A DNA stretch of 64,000 bases from Blastocladiella emersonii ATCC 22665 (Eukaryota; Fungi; Blastocladiomycota), in NCBI GenBank assembly GCA_025594325.1, contig JANHCV010000004.1, positions 2,232,001-2,296,000 of the forward strand. Reading direction: 5' to 3'. A program made the translations under genes and the position numbers. The notes below the pieces were generated by a model. The model saw nothing but the letters and a program-made list of their open reading frames with translations, ran no database searches and was not told the origin of the DNA. Shown here piece after piece: positions 1 through 19,250 of the stretch. Numbering within the stretch: the stretch's first letter is position 1; every line of letters begins with the position of its first letter.

Positions 1-636
1 GCGACCGTCGAGCTCGCAGACGGGACCACGTCGCGCGTCAACCTCCCCGCGCGGCTCCCGCACACGGCGCAGGTATGCACCGTACACGTCGGCGGCGGCG
101 ACTCGGACCTGTACCCCGTCACGGTCACGGTCGAGGCCTCGCTCGACGCGCCGGTCCGCGTCCAGCGCAAGCGCGCCGCGGGTCCGACGTCGAAGCTCAC
201 CATCGCCAACCGTTGGTCGCTCCCGTCGTCCCTCAATGCGCTCGCCGCGCACGCAGCCATCGCGGGCTCGCAGTCCAAGTCGTGGCGCGACGTCGAGTCT
301 GCCGCCGTCGCCCGCGCGCTCATGTCGCTGCCCGTGTTCGACACGCTGCCCGGGATCGCGGACCTGCGCCTCGCGCTCGCGGCCGCGGTCGCTGCGGTGC
401 CCGTGGAAGCGGGCACGGCGTGGATGCGCAAGCAAGGCCGAGCGGCGGGCGACGCGTTCGCGCGACTCGACCCTGAGCACCGCGCGGTTGTCGCGGCGGC
501 GGCTGTCGTTACCGGACGAACGCCAGGCGAGGTCGCGGACGAGGACGCGGCGGCGGTCGCGCGGAGTGTGCTGGGCGGTAGCGACGTGAGCGCGGAGGAG
601 CTCGAGATGGTGAAGGTGTTGGCGTTTGGGGTGTAA
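1..636 (+). CDS. 3' part of an uncharacterised protein (gene runs off the window start)
   Basis: Frame 1 is open from base 1 to TAA at 634-636 with strong GC3 bias (ATVELADGTT...EELEMVKVLAFGV*). A degenerate inverted copy of its 3' end lies at about 6530-6701. Confidence 0.7.
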   Translation, partial: ATVELADGTTSRVNLPARLPHTAQVCTVHVGGGDSDLYPVTVTVEASLDAPVRVQRKRAAGPTSKLTIANRWSLPSSLNALAAHAAIAGSQSKSWRDVESAAVARALMSLPVFDTLPGIADLRLALAAAVAAVPVEAGTAWMRKQGRAAGDAFARLDPEHRAVVAAAAVVTGRTPGEVADEDAAAVARSVLGGSDVSAEELEMVKVLAFGV

Positions 637-965
637 GCGATGATTTTTGAATGATATCGGTCTTTTTGGCACCTGTTACCGTGGCGGTCCAAGCTGAACC
701 GGCTTCCTCCGATCGTTGAGTGGCGCCACAAGCCGGTCAGGCGAGGCCTATTGGAGAAGACAAGATAAAATGGAAGGTCTGGAGTCGCGAACACGTTGGA
801 CGAGGGACGGGCGTGCCCGAAAGACGCGTCGCGCCACCTCGTGCTGCCCGCGTCAGTCCTTTCGAGTCCCAAAAGCGGGCTGATCACCCCAGGCGATTCA
901 TGCCGACGCTCGCTCCCACCGACCGGCTTCCATGTAACGAATCCCTCACATTGGCACTGTACAAC

Positions 966-3024
966 ATGGAGCAAACTGATGCATCGACCACATGTAAGTC
1001 CTGGCAGGATGCGCTTGCAGTCAAGTGCGAGTGCTTGTCGACCGTCCTCTCCATTGTCCGGCACACTCGGTCGCTTGCGAACAGCAGCAGCCAATCCGAT
1101 GTCAACCTTGTCATTCACGGAAAAACCTATGCGCTGCACCGATACGTCTTGGTCCAGAGCCCCTTCTTCGTCGCACTCCTTGGCGACGACTGGCTCGCTT
1201 CAATCGAACGCTGCGATCTCCGCGTCGACTTCACTCTCGGCGCCCAGCGTGATCTCGACGAAACCGACAAACTTGATGCTATCCCTGTCGATACTCGCGG
1301 AGGCAGCATAGAGAATACCAGCGCTATCCAGCTGGGCACCGATCTTACGCAACGCTCGCTCTTTGTGTGGGAAACGGTACTCGTCGCGCTGTACGGCGGG
1401 TGTGAGACGCTTGTCGCGTCCCGCATCACAACTTCAAACTTCTTTGACCACGTCGAGGCCGGAACATACTTTGGTGCGGAAATCTCGGCTGATTGCGTGT
1501 GGGGCTCACGGTTAACTGGGTACCCGCTCACTGAAACGTAGACATCGACTTGGTTGTCGAGGCGTGCCGTAACTTTTACTTGAATCTGCTCGCGGACTGC
1601 TCCACGACCGCCGCTCCCCCGTCGGCGTCCTTCACCGATTTTGCGGCTCGCGTCATGATCTACTGCGACGAAATGACGCTCCCTAAGCCCATCAAGTCGC
1701 TACTTGGTTGCACAATCGCACACCTCAAGTTTTTGGGCCCACATCCGATCACCCGTTAGTCTCGTTGCCAGACCGTATTGTCGCGGGGAGCGGCGGGATT
1801 CCTGCAGTGGGCCGAGGCGGCCCTACCCAGCGCCTGCTGACCCGCGACGTACGTCTACCCACGGTCGGCCGGCCGAGGTCATTTCTCCGAATGCCCGAGG
1901 CCACCCACGCCGACTGTGTGGCCGTAGTGTCTGGCACCGAGACTAATCACCCGTGCCATCCTCCAGCAGTGCCCCGAAAAAATTGTCAAGCACGTCTTTG
2001 ATGACGGCGACTTCTTCTCGCCCTCGGAAATCGCGCTGTACGAGTTCCTCTGCGAGCTCAAACTTCCCTCCGCCGATATCCTTCGGCTCGTGCGCTTTTA
2101 TACCATGCCCAAGTGTGACTTGGAGCGCGCCGTCAACTCCAAGCTTGCTGCCCGCAACATGCTTTTTGGCCTGGCGGTCAAGGCGGCAGCGTTCGACCAG
2201 TACGCGCTGGAAACAGCCGTGACGCGAGCTCAGCCCACCAGCAAAAAGCTTCCAGCCGACTGGTTTCAATACTTTCACGATGACGACGGAGATTTCGATC
2301 CCGGCTTAGACGAGGCAGACGAGGCAGACGGAGCAGAGGGCGCTGCTGAGGCAGACGAAATCGTGGACGAGGCTGCAGATGCCGATGCGGATTCTGATTC
2401 CGATACCGACGCAGTTGCAGATCCGATTATTGAAGCCGTCTCCTCGCTTAAAAGGAGCGTGCACGTAAATGGACATCCTGTCTTGCGTATCCCAGTCCAG
2501 CTTGACCTTTCCGACGATCCTTTCATGACCCGCGCCTACACGAGCGGCCCTCATCTCTTTGCTGGCTCTTGGTGGGAATTTAAATTTCAGCCCAAAGCAG
2601 CCGAGGACCAGGATGCTGGCAAAAAAATCGAGGTGTCCTAGTACGTTTCCATCGCACATCAAGTCGCGCGTCAACACGTCTTTGGTCCGCGCAAGTTAAC
2701 TTACCTGCTACGATTAGTTTCCGTGTCAAATGTGACATTCCGAGCAACTACGTCGACTCTCGTCAAAGGGCAACGTATCAAACTCAAGGATTTGCCTACC
2801 ATGTCCAACCACTTGGCAACCGCAACCGTGGCCCCTGCTCCACCACCTCGCATCTGAAGACATCCGTGTCTTCAGTCGCTGCATACGACTGGACCAAACC
2901 AAAACTGCTTAGCATTGGGAAGAAGTGCGCTGATTGGGACATGGCCCTCGTTGGCGTGGTTCCCCCGCCACTAGTTGATGGAAAGCGCCTGTTTCGCGTG
3001 CTGGTTGACCTGGCGACGATGTAA
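966..3024 (+). pseudogene. BTB/POZ protein (germ-cell-less/Btb2-like), copy 1, interrupted by a MITE
   Basis: MEQTDAS...SDVNLVIHGKTYALHRYVLVQSPFF is a BTB N-terminus. GT-AG intron 1474-1541 gives YF-D-IDLVVEAC. The ORF is broken at PHPITR by the insertion at 1757-1945 and resumes AILQQCPE. C-terminal exons end ...KRLFRVLVDLATM* (3024), matching copy 3. Confidence 0.8.
1757..1945. mobile_element. 189-bp non-autonomous DNA transposon (MITE), 17-bp TIR, 9-bp TSD
   Basis: Left end TAGTCTCGTTGCCAGAC (1757-1773); right end GTCTGGCACCGAGACTA (1929-1945), its reverse complement with 1 mismatch. Flanked by direct repeat ATCACCCGT at 1748-1756 and 1946-1954. Removing it restores the paralog-like reading HPITRAILQ. 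Confidence 0.93.
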
Positions 3025-3413
3025 CGTTGAACACACGGCAGTTATTGTTTATCTCAAAGAGAGAGCCACAAGTCATTGTTTTCTGAATGTAGTAGCGCCG
3101 CGTGATGGCGTTTGTGAGCTGATTTGCGTCCTGACCTGCAAGGTTAGTGCTCGCGATCTGTTCGTTTGTGCGGGAGCCGTCATGCGAGACGCGTTTCGAT
3201 ATCACGTTTGCGGCGTAACCCGCGAGACAAGGTCGAACGACATGTCACAGGAGCAGTCGCCACTCACCATCTGTGAGTTCTCACAGTCCACCAGCGTTTT
3301 TGCCGCACGCGAGCTCGGGAGTCTGGCGCGACCGATCGGCGCGACGGCGTCCATCAAACTCGCGAACGGGACCTGAAGCACGCCGCTCTTGCAGGCTCGG
3401 AGTCCAAGTCTAG

Positions 3414-3458
3414 GCGCGACATGAGTCCGCGGCCCTCGCCCGCGGGCTCATGTCGTGC
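3414..3458. repeat. GC-rich hairpin (19-bp stem, 2 mismatches, 7-nt loop) at the truncation point of BTB copy 2
   Basis: GCGCGACATGAGTCCGCGG-ccctcgc-CCGCGGGCTCATGTCGTGC. Confidence 0.8.
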
Positions 3459-4173
3459 AGAAAATCAGCACCTGTGACGTGAGGTTGAAGAAGGACTCCG
3501 GGGGAGTCTCCGCGGTTGCAGAGCAGTTTGCAAGCAGGCGCAAGAAGTAGCTGCAGCAAGCCTCGACGAGCAGATCAAGTCCTGAATATGAGGTGCGTCG
3601 TGCGCGCAAGGTCAGTCAAGGTAGCTGCGCGAAGGAACAGGCAGCCAAGTTTTTTTTTCCGCACCAAAATAGGTCCCGGCCTCGATGTGGTCAAAGAAGT
3701 TGCAAGCAGAGATACGCGCGGCGACAATGGTTTCGCATCCGCCGTAGAGCACGGTCAGGGCCGACTCCCAAGCATAAAGCGTGCGCTTCGTTTGGTCGAG
3801 ATACGCGCTGCAACGATCGATTTCGCCGTCACTACTGTCTTCGCTGTCGCTACCGGTACCAACATCGGTTCCATCGTCGCGGGGTAGCGTGAAGTCGACT
3901 CAAAGCGCACAGTCATTAGTCGCAGCGTGCCAAACATCGTCAAGTAGAGCGGCAAAGAACGAGCTCTGGATGAGGACGAAGCGGTGCAGGGCATATTGTT
4001 CGCCGTGGATGACGACAGTGACATCCGATTGAGTGCTGCTACCAGCAAGTGCCCGGGCGTGGCTGACGATCGGCAGACGATCGGCAGAAGGGTCGGCGTG
4101 CATCTGCACGCGGTCGCGAGCGTCTCCTGCCAGGCCAGGACTTCGGTATGGTCGATGCATCAAGTTGCTCCAT
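3440..4173 (-). pseudogene. BTB/POZ paralog copy 2, pseudogene fragment
   Basis: Starts MEQLDAST. Frameshifting tandem duplications of 5 bp (4130-4139) and 11 bp (4065-4086). In-frame TGA at 3900-3902 where paralogs have Arg. Homology ends after QVLIFCTT at the hairpin. Confidence 0.85.
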
Positions 4174-4452
4174 GTTGGACGGTGCCAGGGTGACGGACAG
4201 TTACATGGAAGCCGGTCTGGGGGAGCGATGGCGCGATGGTCAACGCGTGGGGATTGGACCAATCACATGCGCGCTTACAACGCGTGAGTGGCGCAACGCG
4301 ACATCGTTCCACCTCCGCGCATCATGCCAGTGCAGGACGCCCGCAATAACTCTCAAAGACCAGTCTCCTTGTTGCAACCTCAGTCCAAATTCACTTAAGC
4401 GAGGGATCAAAAATCAAAAATTTACTACTTCCCACAGCCCGCTCCTTCAGGT

Positions 4453-6264
4453 CTACATCGTTCTCAGCTCGATCATCACACGAAACATACGTTTGCCGCC
4501 GAACAAAGGCGGCGGAACCAGGCCGGTGTACTCGGCGGTCCACGCTTTGACATACTCGTTGCAGTCGATGGTCGTTGGGGCCGTCCACTTCCCTGGACAG
4601 GAACGCACGGCGCGCGTCTGCTCGGGACAAGAGATTGAGCAGATGGCTGCAGTGCGGGACGAAGGGCTTACCTGGTATGTGAAAGCGCGGGCTTGATACG
4701 CAGCACTATAGCGAACATCAACGTAGTGACTCGCTCGCTCATTGACAAACCGACGCCTAAGCCCCTCGTGTTAGTCTGTCAGTGTTCGCCCGGGATCGCA
4801 CCAGTGCTCCTAATAAGTTCACGTACATGTTCAAGCGCACTGCGACCTGGCCGCTTTTGAAACTCTCCTCTATGCGATCAAAGCGGAACTCCCACCACGA
4901 CCCAGCGAAGAACACGGGGAGGCTCTTGCAGCGACGAGCCATGTAAGGATCATCCGTAAGATCAAATTCCAAGGGAACGCGCAAGGTAGGATGTCCAATC
5001 GCAGAAACGCTCTGATGAAGGAGAGTATATGCGTCTTGGTTGCCGCGATCCAAGCCGCGGTGACTTAAGTCGTTCACATTCGCCTCGTATTGAGAGATGG
5101 GCCGAGCGTCGCTGCTGCGAGCGCCCAAGTTTGCCCTACGATTAGCGTCCACGTGCGACGAGCTCGAGTTTCGGTTGTTGACGCGGTCGTGAGTATTGCG
5201 TGTGTGGAACCAACCCTCGGGAAGCATTTGGTTAGTCGGACAACAGCTGCTCACGGCAGATTGCAACGCGTGCTGCTCGTACGCGGCCGCCTTAATGCAC
5301 TGCCCAAACACGCGGTCCTGGCATGCAAGCGGGGAGTTGACGGCACGTTGCAGGTCCGTGCGGTCCATGGCGCTGAAGCGCACGAGTCGAAGAAGGTCGG
5401 CGGGAGGCACGTTGAAGTCGCAGAGAAACTCGTAGCGCGAAATTTCGGAGGGTGACCAAAAGTCGTCATGAAAGACGATGAGGCATACGAAGTCCTCGGT
5501 ACACCGCTGAAGAATAGCGCGCGTCATCGGATGCGGGCCAAGAAACTTGAGATGAGCGATGGTCTCGTTGAGCAGCGAAAAGATAGCTGGCGGGACGATC
5601 ATCTCGATGCAGAACATCATCACGCGGGACACGAGCACGGCATACTCGATGTCCGGAGGACCCGCGCTTGCAATGTGGGCGAGCCAGTGCTTGTATACGC
5701 TGCAGCAAGCATTCTGGAGTTGATCCAAGCCTGTACACGAAGGGAAGAGGTCAGCCCCCTGTTCGTTCAAGCAGTACAAAGCTCACGCAAAACTCACGCA
5801 CCAAAGTAGATTCCAGCCTCGAGGTGTTCGAGGAAGTTGGCGAAGGTGATGCGCGAGACCATGAGCGTCTCGCAACCCCCATAAAGCGCGACAAGGGCCG
5901 ACTCCCACGCAACAAGGGTGCGGTTGATGAGATCGGCATCGGGATCGCTTCCATCGCTAGTGTCCACTTCGACACCGGCGCTGGTGCCCGCAAGCGTAAA
6001 TTCGACGCGAAGCGAGCAGCCCTCGATTGGCGCGTGCCAAAGGTCGCTGAGCAGCGCGGCAAAGAACGGGCTCTGGGTAATAACGTATCGGTGCAGCGGG
6101 TACGTCTTGCCGTGAATCAAAATGCTGATGTCGGACTGTTCGCCGGTTTGAGCAAGATCGCGAAAGTGGCGGACGAGCGAGAGCGCAACAGGCGTGCACT
6201 TGCACCTGGCTGAAAGCGTGTCCCGGAAGGAGGGTATCTCGATGAATTCATTCGTTTGCGTCAT
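4453..6264 (-). CDS. BTB/POZ protein (GCL-like), copy 3, apparently intact, multi-exon
   Basis: MTQTNEF...SDISILIHGKTYPLHRYVITQSPFF; conserved intron after YF-G; IAHLKFLGPHPMTR; FFAGSWWEF; final exon ...PPPLFGGKRMFRVMIELRTM*. No lesion found. Confidence 0.8.
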
Positions 6265-6459
6265 GTTATGCGGTGTCTAGAGATGCATGGTGTCCTTGTC
6301 AGACGGCGGGGTGGGAGGGCGAGTTGGGGAGCGCCAGGTTTCGAACGGAGCCGAGGATCGGCGGCGTGCACCGCATGATCACACGCGGGTGGCGCAACGC
6401 GACTTTCGCCTCGCCTCGCACGCTGGCGTCGATTATTCAATAGTTCCCGTTGATTGCTG

Positions 6460-7839
6460 ATGATGAATAGCACTCGATGGGCTGCGATGTATATCAGTGA
6501 AGTTAACACAACCGCCATCGTGTTCAAAATCGCCCTTACATGCCAAACGCCTGCACCCACCCAGCACACTCCTCGCGACTGCCCCAGCACTCTCGTTCGC
6601 GAACTCTCCCAGTGCTCCTCCAGCAGCAACGGTGGCCGCCGCGACGACCGCGTGGTGCACAGGTGGGCGATCTCGGGCAGCGCATCGAACACAGGCAGCG
6701 AGGAGAAAACGGTCCCGCCGCCCGTGCGTTCGCTCCTTGACGCAACCATCGCTCACCTCAAGTATCTCGGACCGCATCCAATTACACGCATGACTCTTCA
6801 GCGCTGTCCCGAGGATCTCGTACGCCGCGTACTTTGCGAGGGCGACCACAGATCGCCCTCGGAGCTCGCGCGCTACGAGTTCCTTTGCGAGTTTAAAATT
6901 CCCGCAGCCGACATTGTTCGGCTCGTGCTATTCAACACACTCTCCAACCGGGACCTGCATTGTGCAGCAATCTCGCCCCTTGCCGCTCGTGATCCCCTAT
7001 TGGGACTTTGCATCAAAGCAGCCGCGTCCGATACCGAGACGCTCCTCTTAGCTATTCTCAACTGTCGTCCTACCGACCAACGACTCCCCAAGGGCTGGTT
7101 TCCCTCAATCGATGCTGCATCAGAGCAATCTCAAGCTGCTTCAAGTTTCAACGGCGAAATGAGCGACATTTCGCCCGCTGCCAACAAAAGTCGCTCGGCC
7201 GCCGCTTCAGACTCTGACTTGGATGTTCATCCTGGCTCAAACTCGGATTCAAGTTCGGAATCGGAGGATGACGAAGCCATGAGCGAGGATGACGATATCT
7301 CCAACAATTACGCTTCGCTCGAAGCAAGCGTACGCTCGCTTGGGCTTCCAATCTTTCGCATTGCAATCGAGCTCGACTTGACCAACAAGCCTCTTGTGCC
7401 CGGCGGAGAGCCCCGCAAGTGCGGCCCGTACTACATCGCTGGTTCCTGGTGGGAGTTTCACTTCAAGGCCAACCACAAGCTTGACGAGGATGGGCGAATT
7501 GAGGTTCGAATGTCCCCGTACGTCGCCTCGTCCAAGCAGCGAGCAAGAGCCATGTTTGCTTGCCTGGCATCGCTGACGCTCTAAAAACCTAGGATCATCT
7601 TCGCTGACGCTGTCCGGCTCCGTATCTTTGCCGAGTACGCGGAACTTGAGCGTGACGATGTCCACCGCAACTGACGCCATTCTGCGCGGTGTAGGTTCCT
7701 CCACGGCCTGAGCCGCGTCATGAAAAAGGGCACGAGGGACAGCACCGATTCGTCGAACGCGACTGAACCCGCGGTATCGGCGGGCACCGCCTCCTCGTCA
7801 GCGAAAGCGATGCCTCTCCGACCGACCGATCGCAGCTAG
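6460..7839 (+). CDS. Chimeric gene model: antisense-derived N-terminus + BTB-family C-terminal half + last two exons of the 7-TM family
   Basis: ORF is open 6454-7517. BTB-family homology runs from about 6700 (TVPPPVRSLLDATIAHLKYLGPHPITR...YIAGSWWEF). Phase-2 introns 7518-7592 and 7635-7694 splice in frame to IIFADAVRLRIFA-E-FLHGLSRVMKKG...DRS* (TAG 7837-7839). Start codon and expression are unproven. Confidence 0.55.
6530..6701 (-). pseudogene. Degenerate, internally deleted, inverted copy of the 3' end of the gene at 1-636
   Basis: Minus strand reads TCGCTGCCTGTGTTCGATGCGCTGCCCGAGATCGC versus TCGCTGCCCGTGTTCGACACGCTGCCCGGGATCGC at about 325-360. It also carries GTCGCGAGGAGTGTGCTGGG...GCGTTTGGCATGTAAG versus ...GCGTTTGGGGTGTAAG. 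Confidence 0.85.
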
Positions 7840-8594
7840 AGTGTCACGCGGTGCTGCTAATACAAACGATGCATGGTCGAATTATGATATGAGAGTTGAA
7901 GGCACACCTCGTAAGGGCATTCGTTCGCGTGTGATGTCGAGTCGCACCTGAAACGACTTGGAGACGCGACGCTCACATCCGCGTGACTGCGCCACTCGGC
8001 TTTCCGATGGCGTTCGCGCGACCTCCGTCGCAATGCCCTTCCAGGACTGACCTGCTCGCTCCGCTCAAGCTGATTGCGAGCGTGGTGCCGGACTGCATGT
8101 AACATCGATGGGCGTGCTTCACGCGCGAATGGGACACGATCGTGTCTGCTCGCGGGGCTCCGCGTCAAGCCAATGATAAACGACGAGTCTTCACTGATCT
8201 GGGGATCGGCAGAGCTGATGGCCGACATCGGCCACGAAGTTGTCCGATGAAAATGTGGGATCTGAAGCCATGAGAACTGCGCATGTTCAGTTCTGCGACC
8301 GCGACCATGAGGGTCAAAGTGCTCAGCGGCCATCAGTGAAGCAGCAACGCGACACGGCAACGCTGGCAGAACCTGTCAGTCGAGGCGTACGAGCCCTACC
8401 TCGCGAGTAGAACGAAGCAAAAACTCGACGCGGGGGGCGAGACCGTGTTGAGAGAGGAATCAAATGGAGATGCTTGGGGACAAGCAGGCAGGTGCACGCA
8501 CACACGCAAAAATTCGAAGGAGAGAGGGAGGGAGCGAGAGTGGAGGGTACAGCAACGGACGAAACGGTTGAAGAGGGGAGGAGTAAGTAGCGGC

Positions 8595-9280
8595 TTACTT
8601 CTGCTCGAGCTCGACGAGGACGCCGCCGCAGTCCTTGGGGTGGAGGAAGACGACGGGCTTTCCGTGGGCGCCGATCTTAGGCTTCTTGTCGAGGGAGCGG
8701 ATGCCCTTGGTGGTCACGTCGAGGAGGGCGGCCTCGATATCGTCGACCTCAATGCACACGTGGTGGATGCCGCCGTCCTTGTTGCGCTCGAGGAACTTGG
8801 CGATGGGCGACTTGTCGCCGTACGGGTGCAGCAGCTCGATCTTGGTGTTGCCGAGGTGCACAAACACCGTGTAGACGCCGTGCTCGGGGAGCGCGACCTG
8901 CTCCGACACCTCCTTGGCGCGCAGCACGTTCTTGTAGAAGGCGGCCGACTTGGCCATGTCGGGCACGGCGATGGCGACGTGGTTGAGCACGCCGAGCTCC
9001 CACACGGGGTGGTTCTGCGGCGGCAGACCGGCCTGCCCCGCGGGCGCCGACGACCGGCGCGCCGCGGCGGCGGGGGCGGCCTCGATGGACTTGGTCGAGC
9101 CGGTCGAGTTGGTCCGCGAGATGGAGAACTAGAGCAAGGGCAAGGGTAGCAAGAAGCGGGTCAGCCTCCCGGCGACAGGGGCGGTTGATCCATGGTGTCG
9201 AGCAAGCATACACGGCGGACGACGCCGGCGGCGCGGTGGGGCGCGTTGGCGACAAAGCTCTTGATGTTGCGGGACAGCAT
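8595..9280 (-). CDS. MCEE: Methylmalonyl-CoA epimerase, mitochondrial (VOC fold)
   Basis: LNHVAIAVPD, VFVHLGNTKIELLHP, GGIHHVCIEVDDI, GAHGKPVVFLHPKDCGGVLVELEQ. Exon 1 (9280-9212, MLSRNIKSF..., presequence-like) joins in frame through intron 9129-9211. Confidence 0.95.
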
Positions 9281-9576
9281 GGTGTTGATGGCGTAGCAGC
9301 AAGGGCAGTGTTGGGAGCAGGAGAGAGGAGGAGGCCTGGGAAACCCTGCCCGCACGCGGGAGCGGTGGTGGCGGAGCGAGCCCGCGAGAGCGCCGGCCCA
9401 TTTCGGGACACTGCACGTGACTCTACGTAGCAACGCGTGCAGGACCTTGGAGCCAAGCCACGCGCGCGCGTGTGTGCATGAGCGACCCGATGCCGATGCG
9501 ACAAAGTCTATCGGTCGCGCACGTTCTCTCTCCCTCGTTCAAGCAACGATGACGTCGACATCACAACGTGTATTCT

Positions 9577-10137
9577 CTAGGGAGCAGCAGCGCGGCCCGT
9601 GTTGGTCATAGCGAGCGCGACCCAGCCGCCGATCATACAAAGGCCGCCGAGCGGGGTGATGGGGCCCATCCACCGGAACCGCGCCGGGTTGAGGACGAGG
9701 CAGTAGATGGAGCCCGAGAACATGAGGGTGCCGGCCGTGAACAGGCGCGCGGGGAGGAGCGACAGCGGCGTGGCGGCCGTGGGCGACGACGCGCCGCGGT
9801 CCGACGCGCGCATCGCCAGCGACACGAGGATCCCGACCGAGTGCAGCAGCTGGTAGTGCGCGGCTACATGCAGGTGTACGGTGTCAGTGCGGAGTGGTGC
9901 GACGGGGTTCAGGCGAAGGGCGGATCGAACCCGTCTCCCACGACTTGATCTTGCTCGCGTCCGTCACGACCTTGCGGAGGCCGTGGGCGCCGAATGCGCT
10001 ACATGGATAGGCCACGGAGCGTGAGGACCACTTTCATCGGAGCTCGCGGCGGCGTGAGCGGCCTACCCGAGGCACACGCCCGAGGCGGCGAGCAGGCAGC
10101 CCGTGGTCCAGAGCTGGTCGTGCGTGAAGACGGGCAT
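9577..10137 (-). CDS. TMEM256/DUF423 small membrane protein (3 exons)
   Basis: Spliced reading gives AASGVCLGAFGAHGLRK, WETAAHYQLLHS and FSGSIYCLVL...GPITPLGGLCMIGGW. Confidence 0.88.
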
Positions 10138-10375
10138 GGTGGTTGATGCGTTGCAGCGAGTTTAGCGCGGCAAAAGGGCCGATGGCGTCCTCGAAAGGGA
10201 GAGGGGAGCGCGCGGCGCGACGCGCCCCCGGCGATCGGCGCGCCTCCCTCACGTGCGCGAGCAACGCGAGGTGACGTCCGTCCAGACGTCCGTCCGTGTC
10301 TCGCGCAGCGTCGGCCCGCCTCGGCATCCGCGCGCTTCTTCTCCCTCCCTCCCTCTCCTCTCGCAACGAATCCCC

Positions 10376-11919
10376 ATGCAACAACGCACCAACATGATCT
10401 CCTCGGACCGCCGCATCGCGTTTCTCCCGACCATCACGACGCAGCCCGACTGGGACCTGGTCGTGGCCGAGGTAGCGCAGAAGCGGCACAAGGAGTCGTT
10501 CTGGGTGTCGCTGTACTCGACCGACGCCGCCGTCGAGTCGCTGCACGGGTCCGTCGCCGTCACGCGCAAGTACGAGTCGGTCCCCGTCGCCGCGGACGGC
10601 GGGCCCGAGTTCACGGTGCGGCTGCTGACGTCGTCGGCCGCCGCGCGCACCGCCGACAACGTCTCCGCGTACCAGCGCGGGTGCGTGCGCGCGGCGGTTG
10701 GGCTGCGCAACCCGCACCCGTGGCCCGCCATGGCGTGGATGCTGCACGCGCCCGCGGTCGCCGTCGCAGTGATCCGCCCCGACCAGCTCGACGCGGTGCC
10801 CGACGAGCGCACGCTGCGGTCCAAGCCGACGCCCGTCCACTCGGTCGCGTTTTCGCCGGCGGGCGACCTGATCGCGTACGGCGCGGCCAACGGGCTCGTG
10901 CGCGTCGTGGACGCGGCCGACGGGAAGATGCGGCGCACGTTGGCGGGCCATCTCGGCGACGTGCTGCGCACGCGCTTCTTCCCGTCGGGCCAGGTCCTGC
11001 TCACCGTGTCCAATGACCTCACGGCGCGCATCTGGTCGGTCCTCGACGGGTCGTGCCCGCGGATCCTCAAGGGCCACACGCGCGGTACGGTGCTCTGTTT
11101 TGGGGGAAACGCGCCCGACAACTGACGCGGTCACGATGTAGCGCTGACCGACTGCGGGATGCTCGACCGCGGCAAGTCGGTCGTGACGGCCGCGCGCGAC
11201 GGCACCATCCGCGTGTGGCTGTGCGCGACCGCCGAGTGCACGACGGTCATCGAGGTCGACGAGGACCCCATCAACGAGATGGCGCTGCTAGAGATGGCCA
11301 AGTACCGCCCCGACGAGTTCCCCGCATGTACGCGCTCCCCTCCCTTTCACCCCGCCGCGGCCCCTGTTCACTGACCCTCTCGATCGCAGGGCACACGTAC
11401 AAGAGCGACGAGGAAAAGTACATGGCGATCGCCGCGTGCGAGTCGGGCCGGGTCACGGGCGTGCACCTGTCGACCAAGGCCGAGCAGTTCACGGTCACGT
11501 ACCCGCACCGCGCCAACTCGCTCGCCGTGCTCTCGCCCGACCTGCTCGCCGTCGGGTACGAGGACGGCTCGGTGATCGTGTGGGACATGCCGCTGCGCGC
11601 GCAGCGCCACCACATACTCGTGTTCAAGACCCCCGTCACGCAGGTCCGCCGCGTCTCGGACTCGGCCGTCGCCGTGGCGAGCGCCGACGGCCTGCTCCAG
11701 GTCGTCTCGTGGACCCCTGCGCCCGACGGCAAGGGCTCCGAGTACGCGATCCCGCACGTCCTCACGGGCAGCGACATGGAGCCCGTGTACGCGCTCGACG
11801 TGGCCGGCGACGCGGCTACGGTGGTGGCGGCGGGCCGCGACGGCACCCTGCGCGTGTACCGGTGCGGCGCCGACGGCGCCCTCGCCGAGCCCGCGGTGCC
11901 GCTGCCCGCCGATCCGTGA
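10376..11919 (+). CDS. WD40 proteasome assembly chaperone PAAF1/Rpn14-like
   Basis: QPDWD...FWVSLY N-terminus; GHLGDVLRTRFFPSGQVLLTVSNDLTARIWS; LDRGKSVVTAARDGTIRVW. Two short introns. Confidence 0.8.
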
Positions 11920-12220
11920 GAAGAGGCCGTGTCGAGATGAAAGAAAAAATGCAGCCCATTTTTTGAGTGCGCGTGACGGGTGGGCGTGGGAGCGGTCTCG
12001 GGGCCGCACGCCGGTGAGCGACACGCGGCGGCGGCGGCTCAGCGCAACGCGTCGACGCGTCGCGATCGAAAGTGGGTGAGACCGCCGACGTGAATCGGCG
12101 GCCGGGGTCATCACCATGCCCATCACAGGGCGCGCTCTCTCTTCTCTCGCTCTCTCGAGTGCATCCTCGCCAACGACGTATCACCCACACACCAAGACCA
12201 AGACCAAGACCATCACCACC

Positions 12221-13096
12221 ATGCTGACCGCCGCCACCCGCCGCCTCACCACCACCACCACCGCGCTCGCCGCGACGCGCGCGTTCGCCGCCGCGACCAC
12301 CGCGGTCCCCGTGTCGTCGGCCAAGTGGTACGGGACCATCTCGGCGACCATGGCGGCGCGCGCGGGCGGGACGCCGGGGCAGCCGATCGACGAGCTGATC
12401 AAGCAGGACCACCACGAGATCTTCTCGCTGTGGTCGCAGTTCAAGCAGACGCTGCCGTCGAGCGACACGACGGCGCGCGGCGTGCGGGCCGGGTCGAGCG
12501 AGGCGTCGACGCTGTCGTACGGCGGCAACGCGGAGCCGGCCATCACGACGGGCGCGACCGAGTCGTCGTCGGGCCCGATGCAGGGCGACATGGACGCGGA
12601 CTCGGGCATGCTGGCGCACCGCGCGCGGATCGCCAACAGCCTGCTGCGTGCGATCGCGGTGCACTCGGTAGCCGAGGAGCTGACCGTGTACCGCGAGATC
12701 GGCGAGGTGCGCGGCGCCGACGTGATGCAGCAGCTGCTCGCGGACCAGCAGCAGGTCAAGGAGGAGTGCTACGAGCTCGACCGCATGGCCGTGACGGACC
12801 CCGACTACGTGCCGCGGCTGCGCAAGATCATCAAGGAGCTCGAGGTGCACACGGCGGCCGAGGAGCAGCACGAGCTGCCCGAGCTGCGCGCCCGCCTCAA
12901 CGACGCGCGCCTCGTCGAGATCGGCGACATGTTCCAGGCCGTCAAGAACAAGGTGCCGACCCACGCCCACCCGGCCGCGCCCACCAAGTCCGGCACGCTC
13001 GAGGCCGTCGTCGGCATGCTCGTCACCCCCATGGACAAGCTGCGCGACATGGGCCGCGAGTTTGCCGAGGGCGTCGGCGCCAAGGGCAAGCAGTAG
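12221..13096 (+). CDS. Hemerythrin/HHE cation-binding domain protein with a probable mitochondrial presequence
   Basis: IKQDHHEI, AVHSVAEELTVY, LEVHTAAEEQHELP, PTHAHPAAP. The N-terminus is R/A/T-rich with no acidic residues. Confidence 0.8.
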   Translation: MLTAATRRLTTTTTALAATRAFAAATTAVPVSSAKWYGTISATMAARAGGTPGQPIDELIKQDHHEIFSLWSQFKQTLPSSDTTARGVRAGSSEASTLSYGGNAEPAITTGATESSSGPMQGDMDADSGMLAHRARIANSLLRAIAVHSVAEELTVYREIGEVRGADVMQQLLADQQQVKEECYELDRMAVTDPDYVPRLRKIIKELEVHTAAEEQHELPELRARLNDARLVEIGDMFQAVKNKVPTHAHPAAPTKSGTLEAVVGMLVTPMDKLRDMGREFAEGVGAKGKQ

Positions 13097-13392
13097 GCGC
13101 GCGAGGATGGGTTCGCGTGGCGTGCGTGCCGCGGCGGGTGCGGCCGCCGCCGAAGGAGATTTTGTTGTCGTTGTCGATTGCTGCTGCAGAGTATTGATCC
13201 TGTTCTGACCCTCCCCCCACGCCCTCCTCGAGAACTCGCTGAGCGCGACGGTCATCCAGCGCCGCCCTCACGTGTGGTGGTCGGCGGCAACCCGTCGCCT
13301 CCCTCGCGACCGACCTCGCCCCTCCCGGATTGCTCCCACCGCTCCCTCTCAGCGATCAACGCAAACACACCCACTGCAACGTATCAACAACC

Positions 13393-14508
13393 ATGTCGTG
13401 GCTCACCACAGCCGCCATCATCCTCGTCCCGTGGGGCTACCGCAAGTACGCCGAGCACCGCGCCGCGGCCGCCTCGGCGCCCAACAAGCCCGGCACCGGC
13501 GCCGGCGCCGGTCGTGCGAAGGCGCTGTCGACCTCAGACTACCTCTACTACGCGCTGTGCGTGGCCATCATCCTGCACCAGCTATGGACGCTCCTCCTCC
13601 CGACCTTCGACGCGTTCGAGACGACGGGCGTCGCACTCGACGCGCCGGCCTGGGTGCTGCGCAACGCGCTGGCAGCTCACCTGTCGCGCGCCGGGTACAC
13701 GAGCACGACGCTCTCGTTCGACGACGCGGCGTCCCGCTCAACCGTCGCCGCATCCCATACGCTCGGGTTCGCGGACCGGGTCGTGCTGACGTTCCAGCTG
13801 GTGCGGTCGAGCGCGGCGCTGCGCGGGGTGCACGCGGCGTTCGGCGCCGCCACGCTGCTCGGGTGCGCGTACTGCCGCGACCCCGCCGACTACTGGACGT
13901 ACGCGGTGCCCGCGGTCCTGGCGCCGTACGCGGTGCGGGCCGCGGTGTTGGGGGTGCTGACGGCGCCGCTGGAGCGGGGCCACTGGCGCGCGACGGCGGT
14001 CACGGTGCTCGCGGCGATGGCGGGCGTCGAGGCGCTCGTCCGGTTCGATGTCGTTGACCTCGCGTGGATGCTGGGTGGGACCGCCGCCGAAGCCGTCCTC
14101 CGCGTCGACCTGCCGCACCGCGCGCTCGGTAAGATCCACGCCATGGTGACGGTCGTGCTCGTCGGCGCGATCGCCGCGTTCCCGCGCTCCGATAAATCCG
14201 CGGGCGCGGCGCAGGTGCTCGCCGAGGAGGTGATCCCGGCGCTCAACGCGGCGCAGCGGCTCGCCGTGACGACGGGACTCGCGCACGCGGCCGTGATGGG
14301 CGAGCCCGAGGCCCGCGCCAAGTACGTCGAGGTGCAGGCGGCGCAGGCGCGCGCGAATGACCGCGTGCGCGCTGACGCGAGTGTGGCGGCGGCACGGCGC
14401 GAGGCGGCAGCGAGGATCGGGCTCGGCGACCGGCTCGAGGCTGTCGTCAAGGCGGATGTCCAGAAGCTGCTGGCCGAGGGGCTCGGCGTCAACGACGACC
14501 AGGAGTAA
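13393..14508 (+). CDS. Uncharacterised multi-pass membrane protein
   Basis: Intronless ORF with strong GC3 bias, several hydrophobic helices and a C-terminal helical region. No family recognised. Confidence 0.75.
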   Translation: MSWLTTAAIILVPWGYRKYAEHRAAAASAPNKPGTGAGAGRAKALSTSDYLYYALCVAIILHQLWTLLLPTFDAFETTGVALDAPAWVLRNALAAHLSRAGYTSTTLSFDDAASRSTVAASHTLGFADRVVLTFQLVRSSAALRGVHAAFGAATLLGCAYCRDPADYWTYAVPAVLAPYAVRAAVLGVLTAPLERGHWRATAVTVLAAMAGVEALVRFDVVDLAWMLGGTAAEAVLRVDLPHRALGKIHAMVTVVLVGAIAAFPRSDKSAGAAQVLAEEVIPALNAAQRLAVTTGLAHAAVMGEPEARAKYVEVQAAQARANDRVRADASVAAARREAAARIGLGDRLEAVVKADVQKLLAEGLGVNDDQE

Positions 14509-14537
14509 CTCGTAATGTATACACACGCTCATCTGAT

Positions 14538-15273
14538 CTACAGCTCGGCGTCGACCTTGCGCCCGGCCACGGTCCACTTGCCGTGCAGGACCGTCTTCCC
14601 GTCGTCCTCGATGGCGGCCTCGATGGCGTCGCCCGGCTTGACGCTCCCGACGCCCTTGGGCGTACCCGTCAGGATCACGTCGCCCTCCTGCAGCGTCATG
14701 ATCTGCGACACGTGTGCGATGAGCTTGGGCACGCCGAAGATGAAGTCGCGGGTGGTCCCGTCCTGCTTGGTGGCGCCGTTGACCTTGAGCCAGAGACGGA
14801 CGTTGTGCGGGTCCTTGATCGCGGCGGCGGGCACCATGTCGGTGACGGGGGTAAAGTCGTCGAACCCCTTGGCGACCGACCACGGCATGCCCGCCTTCTT
14901 GGCCTTGTCCTGCAGGTCGCGCGCCGTCATGTCGATGGCCAGCGTGTACCCGGCGACGTGCGCCATGGCGTCGGCCTCGCGCACGCGGCTCGCGGGCTTC
15001 CCGATCACGACGCCGAGTTCGACCTCGTGGTGCACGTCGCACTGCTCCGGGATCGTGATGGCGCGGCCCACGGGGCAGTAGCTCGACGTCGGCTTCAGGA
15101 AGAACATGGGCTTGGTCGGCACCGCGTTGCCGAGCTCCTTGGCGTGGTCGCTTCACGGAGGGTGAGGGTTAGCGCCGTGGTCGCGGGCGAGAGGGCGGGT
15201 GCGGAGGGAGCCCGTACGCAAAGTTGCGGCCGATGGCGACAATCTTGCGGCCAGTGTGGCGGAAGGCAGACAT
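14538..15273 (-). CDS. FAH-domain protein (FAHD1/Fmp41-like acylpyruvase/oxaloacetate decarboxylase)
   Basis: RKIVAIGRNFA-(intron)-DHAKELGNAVPTKPMFFLKP, HHEVELGVVIG, IDMTARDLQ, WSVAKGFDDFTP, GDVILTGTPKGVG. Confidence 0.92.
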
Positions 15274-15495
15274 GGTTGGTGCGTGATACGTTGCAATAAG
15301 CGGACGTTGGTAGATGGTAGAGGAGAGAGAGAGGAGGAGAGAGAGGGGGTTGGGGTTCCCTCCGTCGTGTTGACGGCCAGGCGGACCCGACCGGGCGAGC
15401 GAACGACGCGCCGCCGAGGCCCCGGACCCGTTCTCTCTCTCCCCTCCTCTCTCCTCTCCTCCTCCCTCCCCTTCATCGAAAACCCACGCAACACC

Positions 15496-16624
15496 ATGAA
15501 GTTTGACGGCTACGGCACCGACGACCCGCGCATGGGCCACATTCTGGTCGACGCGCCCGCGGGTGTCCCGCTCGCGTCGGTGCTCCCCGCCGGCGACGAC
15601 GCCAAGCCGCGCATCGCCTTCATCGGGTTCCCCGACGACCAGGGCGTCGCGCGCAACGGCGGCCGCGTCGGCGCCGCGCACGGGCCCGAGGCCGCGCTCA
15701 AGTACATTCGCAAGGTCGGCACCATCGTCAACGCCGAGTACGACGTCGATCTGCGGTACGGCTTCTCTCTCCTCCTCGCTCGGGTGGCGGGTTCGCGGCA
15801 CTCACTCGTTGTGCGGATGTAGCACGATCCATCTCGTCAACGCGGGCCCGATCCAGTCCGCGCCCAACGCGCTGTCGGTCGAGGACGCGCACGTTGCGCT
15901 GCGGGCGCGCGTCGCCGAGGCCGTGTCGGCGGGCTTCATCCCGTTCGTCCTCGGCGGCGGCAACAACCAGTCGTACCCGAACGCGCGCGGGCTCATGGAC
16001 GCGCTGCCGCCCGCGACGCCGCTCGCCGTCATCAACATCGACGCGCACATGGACGTGCGCCCGTTCGTGCAGGGCGGGCTCGCGCACTCGGGCTCGCCGT
16101 TCCAGCAGCTGCTCAACGACGCCGAGTTCGCGGGCCCGACGCGCCGCGGGCATTTCGTCGAGTTTGCGCTCCAGGGGTCGCAGTGTTCCGCGGAACACGT
16201 CGCGTTCCTGCGGTCGCGCGACGGCCGGCGCCACCCGGGCGTCGGGACGACGACCGACCTCGTGTGGCTGCGCGACGTGGTACCGAGCACGCCCGAGGGC
16301 GGGGCCGTCGGGACGTCGGCGTTTGCAGCGCAGTTCCGCTTGCTACTCGACGAGTGCGCGCGTGGCGGCGAGGGTGCCGTGTTCGTGTCGTTGGACCTCG
16401 ACGCGGTCCGCGGCTGCGACGCGCCGGGCGTCTCGTGCGCGTCGCCGCTCGGGCTCACGGCGCAGCAGGCGCTCGATATCTGCTACGTCGCCGGCACGCA
16501 TCCGGCCGTCAAGCTCGTCGACCTCTCCGAGTATAACCCAAAGGAGGAGGAGTACCGCACCGGCCGGCTCGTCGCCATGATGGCGTACTACTTTGCCATG
16601 GGGCTCACGCAGCGTCGCAAGTGA
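15496..16624 (+). CDS. hutG: Formiminoglutamase (arginase family, HutG-type)
   Basis: GFPDDQGVARNGGRVGAAHGP is a HutG-type N-terminal signature. Ureohydrolase motifs GGGNNQSY, INIDAHMDVR, HSGSPF and SLDLDAV. One intron, 15756-15822. Lies directly upstream of a histidase gene. Confidence 0.8.
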
Positions 16625-17229
16625 GGGATCTCGTAGCCGCAGTCGATTCAATATACTATTCGACTCGTTTTGATACAATCTACAGTCCATGTCAGCGACG
16701 TGGCGCGGCCCATCAGCCGGTCCTCCCTGCACGCCAAATCCAGGCACACACAAGCGCGATGACTCGAGGCCCACGAGGCTTCGTTCGTATTGCCGGGCGG
16801 CGTCGTGAAGCGCCGTGGCTGCCGCGCGGTTGATGCCGCATCTGATCTCGCCCCGAGAGGGCGGCCGGCCGGCGGCCTCCGACGCGACGCGGGACGCGCC
16901 GGCCACCGCTCACGTGGGCGGCTGAACGGGACGCGCGCCCATTGGGCGGCCACTTAAGCGCCAAACGCACGTCGCACGTGAGCAAAAGTGTCTCGCGTCG
17001 CGCGGTCCCGCTGCCCGCGGACCCGCGGACCCGCGCCGGGCAGTGCAGCGGACCCTGCCCGTCGGCAGTACCTGCGCAGCCTGTGCGGGCCGCGCGGACC
17101 CCCGTTGGGGACGGGGCCCGACTACAAAAGCCGCGCGGCTCCAGCTGCCCGCACTCGGCTCCTCACCTCTGCGACACGCGATCGCACCTCCGACTCTCTC
17201 TCTGCAACGCACCAACGCATCAACCAACC

Positions 17230-19056
17230 ATGCCCTACTCGAAGACCAACCCCAAGATCTTCCTCCTCGACGGCGAGTCGCTGACTCCCGAGGAGCTCGT
17301 CCTGCTCAGGTCCGTCCCTGCAAGTCGCCGACGTCCAGTAGGATGCACGCGCTGACGCTCCGATCCCATCCCTGTCGCGTCCGCGTAGCCATGGCAACCA
17401 CACCATCGACCTGACCGAGACCGCCTGGGAGGTACTTACTTCCTGACCCATGGCTCCTCCCGAGCCGCGCTCACCTTCCCGTCCCATGTCCCCTCTCCTC
17501 GTAGCGCATCGCCGAGTCGCGCGCGCTCGTCGAGAAGCTCGCGTCGTCGGGCAAGGCCATCTACGGCATCAACACGGGCTTCGGCAACTTTGCCACGGTC
17601 ACCATCCCCGACGACCAGCTCTCGCAGCTGCAGATCAACCTCATCACGTCCCACTCGGCGGGTACGGGCCCCGCGCTGAGCCCCGCTCGCACCCGCATGT
17701 TGCTGGTGCTCCGCATCAACGTGCTGGCCAAGGTGCGCTCTCTCATTTACGCTCGACGTGGCTCGCGTCCGGTCCACTAACGATCTCTTCTTCGCGACAC
17801 AGGGCTTCTCGGGTATCTCGCCCAAGAACGTCGGCTGCATGCTCGCCGCCTTCAACAAGGGCTGCCTCAGCTACGTCCCCGAGCAGGGCACGGTCGGCGC
17901 GTCGGGCGACCTGGCGCCGCTCGCGCACCTGGCGCTCGGCATGATGGGCATGGGCAAGATGTGGGACCCGACGCTCAACCAGTACGACGACGCGGCCGCC
18001 GTCCTCAAGCGGCACGGCCTGACGCCGATCCAGCCGGGCGCCAAAGAGGGGCTCGCCATGATCAACGGCACCCAGTTCATCGCGTCGCACGGCGCCGAGG
18101 CCGTGGTGCGCGCGTCGCTCGTCGCCAAGCAGGCCGATGTGGTCGGCGCACTCACGCTCGAGGCGCTGCAGGGCACGCCGCGCGCGTTCGACCCCAAGGT
18201 CCACGCGGCGCGCCCGCACCCGGGCCAGGTCGCCTCGGCGGCGCGCCTGCGCGCGCTCCTGCACCGCCCCGACCACCCGTCCGAGATCTTCGAGGCGCAC
18301 ATCGACTGCGCGCGCGTCCAGGACAGCTACACGCTGCGGTGCATGCCGCAGGTGCACGGGGCGTCGGCCGATACCGTCGAGATGGTGCGCGAGGTGATCA
18401 CGACCGAGATGAACTCGGCTACGGACAACCCCATGTGCTTTGCAGAGACGTCGAGCATCGTCTCTGCCGGCAACTTCCATGGGGAATACCCCGCCAAGTT
18501 CCTCGACTACCTCACGATCGGTGTGCACGAGCTCGCGTCCATCTCGGAGCGCCGCATCGAGCGGCTCATCAACCCGACGCTGTCGGGTCTCCCCGCGTTC
18601 CTCGTCGCCAAGGGCGGGCTCAACTCCGGGTTCATGATCCCGCACTGCACGGCCGCCGCCCTCGTCTCCGAGAACAAGCAGATGGCCAACCCGGCGTCGA
18701 CCGACTCGATCCCGACCTCGGCCGGCAAGGAGGACCACGTGTCCATGGGCGGGTTCGCCGCGCGCAAGTGCGTCAAGGTCGTCGAGAACGTCGAGAAGGT
18801 GCTCGCCATCGAGCTCCTCGCCGCGTGCCAGGCCATCGAGTTCCACCGCCCCAAGAAGACCACCCCGGCGCTCGAGGCCGTCTACGCCCTCGTCCGCAGC
18901 AAGGTCCCCGCCTACGACGAGGACCGGTTCATGGCCCCCGATATCGAGGCTGCCTGGAAGCTCATCCGCTCCGGCGCCGTCTGGAACGCCGTCGCCAAGC
19001 ATATCGGCGAGCAGCCCGCCGACCACGAGGTGCACGACGGGCTCATGGGCCTGTGA
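17230..19056 (+). CDS. hutH: Histidine ammonia-lyase (histidase)
   Basis: [21 protein letters not shown]-forming [55 protein letters not shown]-like [18 protein letters not shown]. Three short 5' introns. Confidence 0.95.
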
Positions 19057-19250
19057 GCCGTGACGGAGGGCGAGGAGGGCCGCCGTGTTGGCGGCCTCGA
19101 CCGATTTGTTTTATCTAGCGCATCATCATATACACGCAAATGCATCCATGCAACAGCCACTTGGACTTCGGCGTGATGGGCGAGATGGACCATGGGTGCG
19201 AGAGTCCTCGGTTTTGGGTCAGCGGTCACTCGAGGAACGGGCGGGAGACA

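What the first reader, a model, noticed from the sequence alone, without database searches (positions are those of the whole stretch)
6454..7839. In-frame exon-shuffled chimera: BTB-family C-terminal half spliced to the last two exons of a 7-TM receptor gene
Seen in sequence: three unrelated sources are joined. First, about 250 bp that includes the antisense strand of a decayed copy of the window's first gene, read without stops. Second, the post-BTB half of the BTB family (about 6700-7517). Third, directly after the BTB family's conserved GTACGT donor (7518), an acceptor at 7592 leads into IIFADAVRLRIFA, a second intron (7635-7694) and FLHGLSRVMKKG...*. These are the TM7-end and tail exons of the 7-TM family found at 22, 61 and 62 kb. 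Both introns are phase 2 in the donor families, so the fusion is in frame with canonical GT/branch/AG sites and no stops. Inference: this is a young gene created by intron-mediated recombination between two expanding accessory families. It could put a putative substrate-binding domain that lacks its Cul3-binding BTB (a possible dominant negative) onto a receptor tail.
Basis: partly seen in the sequence, partly recalled or inferred. Interest (0 to 1): 0.82.

Follow-up and report, generated by a model that had tools for sequence, protein, structure and literature searches.

The report
Inversion-split gene remnant, not new gene
The supposed new fusion gene in the fungus Blastocladiella emersonii is the back half of an ordinary family gene that a 3.2-kb inversion cut in two; its front half lies nearby on the other strand and is already decaying, so this is most likely a rearrangement scar.

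Summary
The sequence observation is correct. ORF 6454-7584 joins three sources, and GT/branch/AG sites give an in-frame, phase-2 splice path into two exons of a multi-pass membrane-protein family. The product would be 414 aa from ATG 6460.

The 5' junction is one breakpoint of a clean 3.2-kb inversion (about 3457-6699). Flipping that segment back repairs two sequences at once. The decayed APC1 3' fragment (3378-3455 plus 6698-6433) becomes contiguous. The "missing" BTB half (4173-3457, minus strand) joins the C-half at 6700, in frame and without a gap. That N-half carries two frameshifting tandem duplications and a TGA.

The 81 codons upstream of 6703 are a chance antisense ORF; 20% of random positions in the island have as long a stop-free run. 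The 3' junction really does lie between a conserved family donor and a membrane-family acceptor. It may once have been a working fusion.

Independent contigs of two read sets span 3000-8400 with no differences, so this is not a misassembly. No RNA run was listed, so expression is untested. The public annotation calls no gene here. Other gene-splitting inversions were noted elsewhere in this genome by this scan.

Verdict: most likely a dead remnant in a birth-and-death cluster. Interest is low to moderate.

The parts
6460..6699 (+). 5' extension of the ORF: 80 codons from the first ATG. It reads the antisense strand of the decayed APC1 3' fragment. A chance open frame, not family-derived.
   Evidence: blastn 6557-6701 vs 578-325; stop-free run of this length has P about 0.20 in the island; no homologs
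6700..7517 (+). C-half of the split BTB-family gene ('copy 2/4'). It has a helical BACK-like part (about 6703-7060), an acidic/Ser-rich linker, and the start of a beta-rich C-terminal domain. No stop or frameshift.
   Evidence: tblastn to paralogs; alignment A2; AlphaFold2 model has residues 1-115 helical with pLDDT 75-89 and the rest under 60
7518..7592 (+). Junction intron: GTACGT donor at the family's conserved phase-2 position, CTGAC branch at 7573-7577, CTAG acceptor as in the 61/62 kb membrane genes. The breakpoint lies somewhere in 7524-7588.
   Evidence: the intron interior has no significant similarity to either parent family
7593..7634 (+). Penultimate exon of the membrane-protein family, (P)IIFADAVRLRIFA
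   Evidence: 11/13 aa and 29/39 nt identical to 22942-22980; 9/13 aa to the 61 and 62 kb copies
7635..7694 (+). Second intron: GTACGC donor, CTGAC branch, TAG acceptor. Phase 2, at the same position as in all intron-bearing family members.
7695..7839 (+). Last exon of the membrane-protein family: FLHGLSRVMKK, then a Ser/Thr-rich tail and a TAG stop
   Evidence: 10/11 aa and 27/33 nt identical to 23039-23071
3457..4173 (-). N-half (BTB domain and start of the BACK-like region) of the same gene, separated by the inversion. It ends at ...QVLIFC, exactly where the C-half begins. Lesions: 5-bp tandem duplication at 4130-4139, 11-bp tandem duplication at 4066-4087, TGA at 3900-3902.
3457..6699 (.). 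Inverted segment of about 3.24 kb (ends known to within about 3 nt). It holds the N-half of the split gene, the intact paralog copy 3 (6264-4456, minus strand) and most of the APC1 3' pseudo-fragment.
   Evidence: Un-inverting gives single-HSP alignments across both junctions; self-blastn
3378..3455 (+). First part of the decayed APC1 3' copy (equivalent to window 249-327), left outside the inversion
   Evidence: 82% identity to 249-327; alignment across the virtual junction
6433..6701 (-). Second part of the decayed APC1 3' copy (equivalent to window 325-about 640), inside the inversion
3414..3458 (.). Near-perfect palindrome (19-bp stem) ending at and spanning breakpoint 1
   Evidence: DNA fold -22.7 kcal/mol, z -6.6; the parental APC1 stretch has z -0.7

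Best explanation
The locus is the 3' remnant of one member of a three-gene tandem array. The array belongs to a BTB-containing family found only in Blastocladiella emersonii.

Shown: a balanced inversion of about 3.24 kb (window about 3457-6699) has one breakpoint in that gene, between the codons for ...LIFC and EEKT.... The other breakpoint is in a decayed duplicate of the APC1 3' end, next to a strong palindrome. The inversion moved the gene's promoter, start codon, BTB domain and first BACK-like helices to 4173-3457 on the minus strand. It placed antisense APC1-derived sequence in front of the C-half. An ATG at 6460 and 80 stop-free codons there are a chance feature.

Shown: at its 3' end the gene's conserved phase-2 donor is followed by the last two exons of a multi-pass membrane-protein gene, instead of the family's own last two exons. 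The junction lies within a 65-nt stretch of intron.

Inferred: the 3' junction came from a deletion or duplication end-point that joined a BTB gene to a neighbouring membrane-protein gene. It may have given a working in-frame fusion before the inversion. The inversion then inactivated the gene. The N-half has since acquired three disabling lesions, and the C-half is still open only because the event is recent. The present ORF is most likely not a functional gene.
For: Complementary halves: the copy-3 protein matches 3585-3457(-) with aa 16-57 and 6703-7524(+) with aa 59-320. An independent family member, P0001, matches aa 32-182 on copy 2 and aa 186-316 on the C-half.

Repair on un-inverting: after flipping the segment back in silico, copy 3, copy 1, P0001, P0002 and P0003 each align across the junction in one frame as a single HSP. 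Copy 3 gives E 9e-58; P0001 and copy 1 have no gaps. The parental APC1 sequence likewise aligns across the other junction. Only 1-3 nt are ambiguous at the junctions.

N-half lesions: 5-bp and 11-bp tandem duplications and a TGA.

Missing native exons: the family's own two terminal exons are present in copies 1 and 3 but absent for this gene anywhere in the window.

Assembly: Logan contigs of runs X1 and X2 cover 3000-8400 in one piece with 0 differences. The assembly is PacBio HiFi (PMC9730499).

Other points: the window is 100% identical to GCA_025594325.1 contig JANHCV010000004.1, whose annotation calls no gene between the epimerase and APC1. The 5' ORF length is not unusual.
Against: The C-half plus the two membrane-family exons (about 1,000 nt) have no stop or frameshift, while the N-half (about 700 nt) has three lesions. 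Given three lesions, the chance that all fall in the N-half is about 0.07. This hints weakly at constraint on the C-half.

All family-conserved residues are kept in the C-half.

Both 3'-junction end-points lie in short introns with matching phase and intact donor, branch and acceptor. By my rough estimate this happens by chance in under 1% of gene-gene junctions.

The ATG at 6460 lies 196 bp from the ATG of the divergently oriented, intact copy 3, so a shared bidirectional promoter could drive transcription.

The annotation was ab initio, without RNA data, so its silence is weak evidence. Expression was not testable.
Confidence: 0.74

Rival explanations
1. First reader's idea, updated. The inversion gave the C-half a new promoter (shared with the divergent copy 3) and a new start codon. 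The locus would now express a 414-aa protein: a de novo N-terminus, a BACK-like domain without BTB, a partial C-terminal domain and a membrane-protein tail. It would act for example as a dominant-negative or decoy of the BTB family.
For: Intact ORF with canonical splice signals. No lesions in about 1,000 nt, against three in the N-half. Family-conserved residues are kept. Head-to-head with the intact copy 3, the two ATGs 196 bp apart.
Against: There is no transcript evidence. No gene model exists in the public annotation. The 5' ORF is what chance gives.

The retained protein starts inside the BACK-like region and ends inside the C-terminal domain. It lacks the two conserved terminal exons. 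The AlphaFold2 model gives that C-terminal part a pLDDT below 60.

The membrane-derived piece has Kyte-Doolittle hydropathy 1.2, below the usual threshold for a transmembrane helix. The lesion asymmetry is not significant (P about 0.07).
Confidence: 0.15
2. The BTB-membrane-tail fusion was a functional exon-shuffled gene before the inversion (full BTB + BACK + partial C-domain + tail). The inversion then killed it. This is a sub-case of the best explanation that differs only in the history of the 3' junction.
For: The junction is intron to intron with matched phase 2 and all splice signals intact. Family members elsewhere (the L001 array) have variable C-termini and lack the C-terminal domain altogether, so its replacement need not be harmful.
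Against: Among many rearrangement scars in a 34-Mb genome, a few in-frame ones are expected, and this one was picked because it is in frame. The order of the two events is unknown. No second copy or ortholog carries the fusion.
Confidence: 0.35
3. Assembly artefact: the joins at 6701/6702 or 7518-7592 are misassemblies.
For: None found. All available reads come from one sample.
Against: Contigs assembled independently from runs X1 (depth 41) and X2 (depth 135) span 3000-8400 with no differences. Low-depth X3 contigs span breakpoint 1 and the 3' junction. The assembly is HiFi with 10.5-kb mean reads.
Confidence: 0.02

Closest known systems
Gene-splitting balanced inversions (simple two-break inversions repaired by end joining)
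   Same: There are two breakpoints. Both broken sequences are restored when the segment is flipped. No sequence is lost, and 1-3 nt of microhomology or filler sit at the joints. A palindrome lies at one break.
   Different: No long inverted repeats or transposon copies flank the segment. That contrasts with the Helentron-bracketed inversion that this scan reported elsewhere in the same genome (s1-283528).
Chimeric new genes made by exon shuffling or gene fusion, such as jingwei and Sdic in Drosophila (from my own knowledge)
   Same: Exons of two unrelated genes are joined through an intron with compatible phase, giving a continuous reading frame.
   Different: Those genes have shown transcripts, and population or sister-species evidence of selection. 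Here there is no expression evidence, and the fused gene was afterwards cut by an inversion.
Germ cell-less (GMCL1) type BTB-BACK proteins, Cul3 substrate adaptors
   Same: A profile of the family's N-half has GMCL1 as its best solved match (E 8.6e-4), followed by many BTB domains. A helical BACK-like region follows it.
   Different: Pfam's BTB model does not reach threshold. The C-half matches no solved structure by sequence. The fold match to KLHL11 BTB-BACK is not significant (E 1.6). The ORF under study has no BTB at all.
Fungal multi-pass membrane families DUF7703 / Fung_rhodopsin (PTH11-like)
   Same: Language-model features of the 62-kb family member are nearest to DUF7703 clusters (0.90-0.92). 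It has six clear hydrophobic helices and one weak one.
   Different: There is no Pfam hit at E <= 1. Receptor function is untested. Only the last 61 residues of such a protein are present at this locus.

Membership tests
Balanced inversion | Flipping the segment back restores continuity of the sequences broken at both ends | tested here: met
   Single-HSP, single-frame alignments of five family proteins across the virtual gene junction, and of parental APC1 DNA across the other junction
Balanced inversion | The arrangement is real in the DNA, not an assembly join | tested here: met
   X1 and X2 contigs span 3000-8400 with 0 differences; HiFi assembly. All reads are from one strain.
Expressed chimeric (exon-shuffled) gene | Junction in introns of compatible phase with intact splice signals and an open frame | tested here: met
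   Phase 2 on both sides; GTACGT / CTGAC / TAG signals; 414-aa product with a single terminal stop
Expressed chimeric (exon-shuffled) gene | Transcribed and spliced as predicted | not testable with these tools
   No RNA run was listed for the locus. The public annotation is ab initio and calls nothing here.
Expressed chimeric (exon-shuffled) gene | Own promoter and genuine 5' end | tested here: not met
   The ancestral 5' half lies inverted at 4173-3457. The present 5' ORF is a chance antisense frame. A borrowed bidirectional promoter is possible but not shown.
Expressed chimeric (exon-shuffled) gene | Evidence of selection (conservation in other strains or species) | not testable with these tools
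   The family has only three other hits among 1.84 billion representatives, all from B. emersonii. The locus in the second Blastocladiella assembly is not syntenic.
BTB/POZ (GCL-like BTB-BACK) proteins | A BTB domain in the product | tested here: not met
   The ORF begins after the BTB and 3-box region. The family's N-half itself is BTB-like: GMCL1 at E 8.6e-4 and 30+ BTB chains; Pfam BTB is 'faint' on P0001.
BTB/POZ (GCL-like BTB-BACK) proteins | BACK-type helical domain after the BTB | tested here: inconclusive
   Confident all-helical model for residues 1-115. The best Foldseek hits are KLHL11 BTB-BACK, but at E 1.6 and probability 0.44-0.47.
7-TM receptor family | Seven transmembrane helices and a recognised receptor family signature | tested here: inconclusive
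   Six strong hydrophobic segments and one weak one in the 62-kb copy; no Pfam family; nearest by features is DUF7703. The locus itself keeps only 13 + 48 terminal residues.

The most novel reading that the evidence does not exclude
The inversion did not kill the C-half but re-wired it. It would be transcribed from the promoter region it now shares head-to-head with the intact paralog, and start at a de novo ATG in antisense APC1-derived sequence. It would make a BTB-less BACK-domain protein with a membrane-protein tail, which interferes with or diversifies the function of its BTB paralogs. That would be a gene born from two successive rearrangements.
Probability: 0.12. Interest if true: 0.6.

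Novelty: new member of a known kind. Interest (0 to 1): 0.3.

Why it matters
As it stands, this is a well-resolved example of how small inversions and intron-level junctions reshape a fast-evolving, lineage-specific gene cluster in an early-diverging fungus. It also warns that an open, spliceable chimeric frame can be the by-product of a gene being broken.

It corrects the count of family copies in the cluster: there are three genes, not four. It also adds one more clean gene-splitting inversion to several noted in this genome, which may point to a genome-wide tendency worth measuring.

If the ORF proved to be expressed, it would be a rare documented case of gene birth through an inversion that supplies a new 5' end.

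Tried and rejected
- RNA evidence. The run search failed three times as busy. It then listed only three DNA runs from one sample and no RNA run.
- Word-based homolog search with the 376-aa ORF found nothing.
- Pfam on all pieces of both families gave no hit at E <= 1.
- A C-half profile against PDB sequences gave no hit.
- Locating the 3' breakpoint inside intron 7524-7592 by local alignment to the paralog introns and exon ends gave nothing above shuffled controls.
- A search for the native terminal exons of the split gene, or for 5' exons of a membrane gene, elsewhere in the window found none.
- Codon-position GC content did not discriminate coding from non-coding pieces.
- The locus in the second Blastocladiella assembly (L003) is not syntenic, so no presence/absence test was possible.
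- Exact look-up of the epimerase ORF failed because the annotated model is longer.
- Misassembly was considered and rejected.

Full report
**Where the window comes from.** Window 1-19280 is 100% identical, in reverse, to locus L002. L002 is part of Blastocladiella emersonii ATCC 22665 assembly GCA_025594325.1, contig JANHCV010000004.1. That assembly was made from PacBio HiFi reads (mean 10.5 kb), polished with Illumina reads, and annotated ab initio with funannotate (PMC9730499). The window's first gene is the 3' end of an APC1 homolog. The gene at 8595-9280(-) is methylmalonyl-CoA epimerase. The public annotation calls no gene between these two, that is in window 637-8594.

**Checking the observation.** ORF 6454-7584 is real.
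- Residues 84-357 (6703-7524) align in one frame to the post-BTB halves of two paralogs: 4757-5605(-) and 1931-2671(+), at 39% and 37% identity.
- Upstream, 6557-6701 is 73-79% identical to window 578-325 in reverse orientation.
- At 7518 there is a GTACGT donor. It sits at exactly the position and phase (2) of the donor in both paralogs.
- A CTGAC branch site and a TAG acceptor lead to exon 7593-7634, (P)IIFADAVRLRIFA.
- A second phase-2 intron (7635-7694) leads to the tail exon 7695-7839.
- These two exons match the last two exons of a membrane-protein family at 22.9 kb (11/13 and 10/11 residues) and at 61 and 62 kb.
- The 61 kb and 62 kb genes have both introns at the same positions, with the same CTAG acceptor. 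The 22.9 kb gene lacks the first intron.
- The spliced product from ATG 6460 would be 414 residues.

**What the 5' junction is.** A self-comparison of window 1-8600 gave the key. Positions 3378-3455(+) match APC1 positions 249-327, and 6701-6557(-) match APC1 positions 325-578. The decayed APC1 copy is thus itself cut in two, and the two pieces lie on opposite strands 3.2 kb apart.

The same holds for the BTB-family gene. A copy containing only the N-half lies at 4173-3457(-) and ends with ...SQVLIFC. The C-half starts at 6700 with EEKTVPPPVRSLL. The intact paralogs read ...YCDEMTLPKPIKSLL and ...FCIEMIVPPAIFSLL at this point. The copy-3 protein hits the N-half with residues 16-57 and the C-half with residues 59-320. 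P0001, an independent family member from another contig, hits them with residues 32-182 and 186-316.

I flipped 3457-6699 back in a script. Copy 3, copy 1, P0001, P0002 and P0003 then each aligned across the junction as one HSP in one frame. Copy 3 gave E 9e-58; copy 1 and P0001 had no gaps. The parental APC1 DNA aligned across the other junction as well. Only 1-3 nt at each joint are ambiguous: a TCG/CGA triplet and single T and C bases.

This is the signature of a balanced two-break inversion. The "four" family copies noted earlier in the cluster are really three genes. Before the inversion the order was: APC1, copy 1, a partial APC1 duplicate, copy 3, then the gene studied here, all on the plus strand. 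That is a tandem array.

**State of the two halves.** The N-half carries a 5-bp tandem duplication (4130-4139), an 11-bp tandem duplication (4066-4087) and a TGA (3900-3902) where the paralogs have an Arg codon. The C-half and the two appended exons have no lesion.

Given three lesions spread by length over about 700 and 1,000 nt, the chance that all three hit the N-half is about 0.07. This is a hint of constraint on the C-half, not a significant one.

The 80 codons between ATG 6460 and 6700 have no homologs. Their being stop-free is unremarkable: 19.5% of positions and frames in the island have at least 83 stop-free codons upstream.

**The palindrome.** Positions 3414-3458 fold as a 19-bp stem (-22.7 kcal/mol, z -6.6) that ends at, and by 3 nt spans, breakpoint 1. 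The corresponding parental APC1 stretch is not unusual (z -0.7). It may have caused the break or arisen during repair. I could not tell which.

**The 3' junction.** In copies 1 and 3 the conserved donor is followed by two more conserved exons: 2719-2808 and 2926-3021 in copy 1, and 4755-4672 and 4542-4456 in copy 3. No such exons exist for the split gene anywhere in the window. No 5' exons of a membrane-family gene lie in window 1-8600.

The join therefore lies between the donor hexamer (7518-7523) and the acceptor (7589-7592). The 65 nt in between resemble neither parent above chance.

I roughly estimate that under 1% of random gene-gene junctions would have both end-points in short introns with matching phase. 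The fusion may therefore have been a spliceable, perhaps useful, gene before the inversion. However, the locus was selected for attention because it is in frame, and the order of the two events is unknown.

**What the families are.** The BTB family is almost private to this species. An exhaustive HMMER search of 1.84 billion representatives found three hits, all hypothetical proteins of B. emersonii.
- A profile of N-halves has germ cell-less-like 1 (GMCL1, 9ijj) as best solved match (E 8.6e-4), followed by about thirty BTB chains.
- Pfam's own BTB model is only 'faint' on P0001 and silent on the window copies.
- The C-half model is confidently helical for residues 1-115 and poor afterwards. 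Its best fold matches are KLHL11 BTB-BACK, but not significantly.
- Another array of four family genes (locus L001) lacks the C-terminal domain entirely, so the family's C-termini vary.

The membrane family has no Pfam hit. By language-model features it lies nearest to DUF7703 clusters. It has six clear hydrophobic helices plus one weak one. "7-TM" is plausible; "receptor" is unproven. The piece present at the locus (Kyte-Doolittle hydropathy 1.2) would not by itself be expected to span a membrane.

**Assembly check.** Contigs assembled independently from runs X1 and X2 cover 3000-8400 in one piece with no differences. Low-depth X3 contigs cross breakpoint 1 and the 3' junction. All three runs are from one sample, which may be the source of the assembly. 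Misassembly is very unlikely.

**Expression.** No RNA run was listed for the locus. A paper search found no B. emersonii RNA-seq study in the library. Whether the ORF is transcribed, possibly from the region it now shares head-to-head with copy 3 (ATGs 196 bp apart), remains open.

**Verdict.** Its reading as a young exon-shuffled gene is mostly not supported.
- The 5' join is an inversion breakpoint that cut a full-length gene. The missing half lies 2.5 kb away and is decaying.
- The 3' join is a genuine intron-level fusion whose past function is possible but unproven.
- The most likely present status is a dead remnant in a birth-and-death cluster (about 0.74).
- A live, re-wired gene cannot be excluded (about 0.12-0.15).
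- Other notes of this scan report further gene-splitting inversions elsewhere in this genome, so the kind of event is not new here.

Noticed in passing
window 19251-20467 and 22412-23628: A perfect (100%) 1,217-nt inverted repeat with 1,944 nt between the arms. It duplicates the 3' two-thirds of the 22-kb membrane-protein gene in inverted orientation.
   Followed up: no
window 27108-27963 (+): A fifth, more distant member of the membrane-protein family. It seems to lack both terminal introns. Intron presence thus varies within the family: both in the 61/62 kb copies, one in the 22 kb copy, none here.
   Followed up: partly
window 637-8594: The public annotation of this assembly calls no gene in the whole 8-kb island, although BTB-family copy 3 (6264-4456, minus strand) looks intact with all exons and splice sites.
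   Followed up: partly
L001:8000-15100 (JANHCV010000007.1): A tandem array of four BTB-family genes about 1.9 kb apart, of which only one (P0001) is annotated. All lack the C-terminal FAGSWWEF domain seen in the window's copies.
   Followed up: partly
window 3414-3458 vs 275-335: The roughly seven differences between the APC1 pseudo-copy and its parent in this stretch all improve a palindrome that ends at the inversion breakpoint (z -6.6 against -0.7). This could reflect templated repair or a fragile site.
   Followed up: partly
window 1756-1931: The protein alignment of copy 1 is interrupted by about 175 bp between 1756 and 1931. This is consistent with the MITE insertion noted by the first stage.
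   Followed up: no
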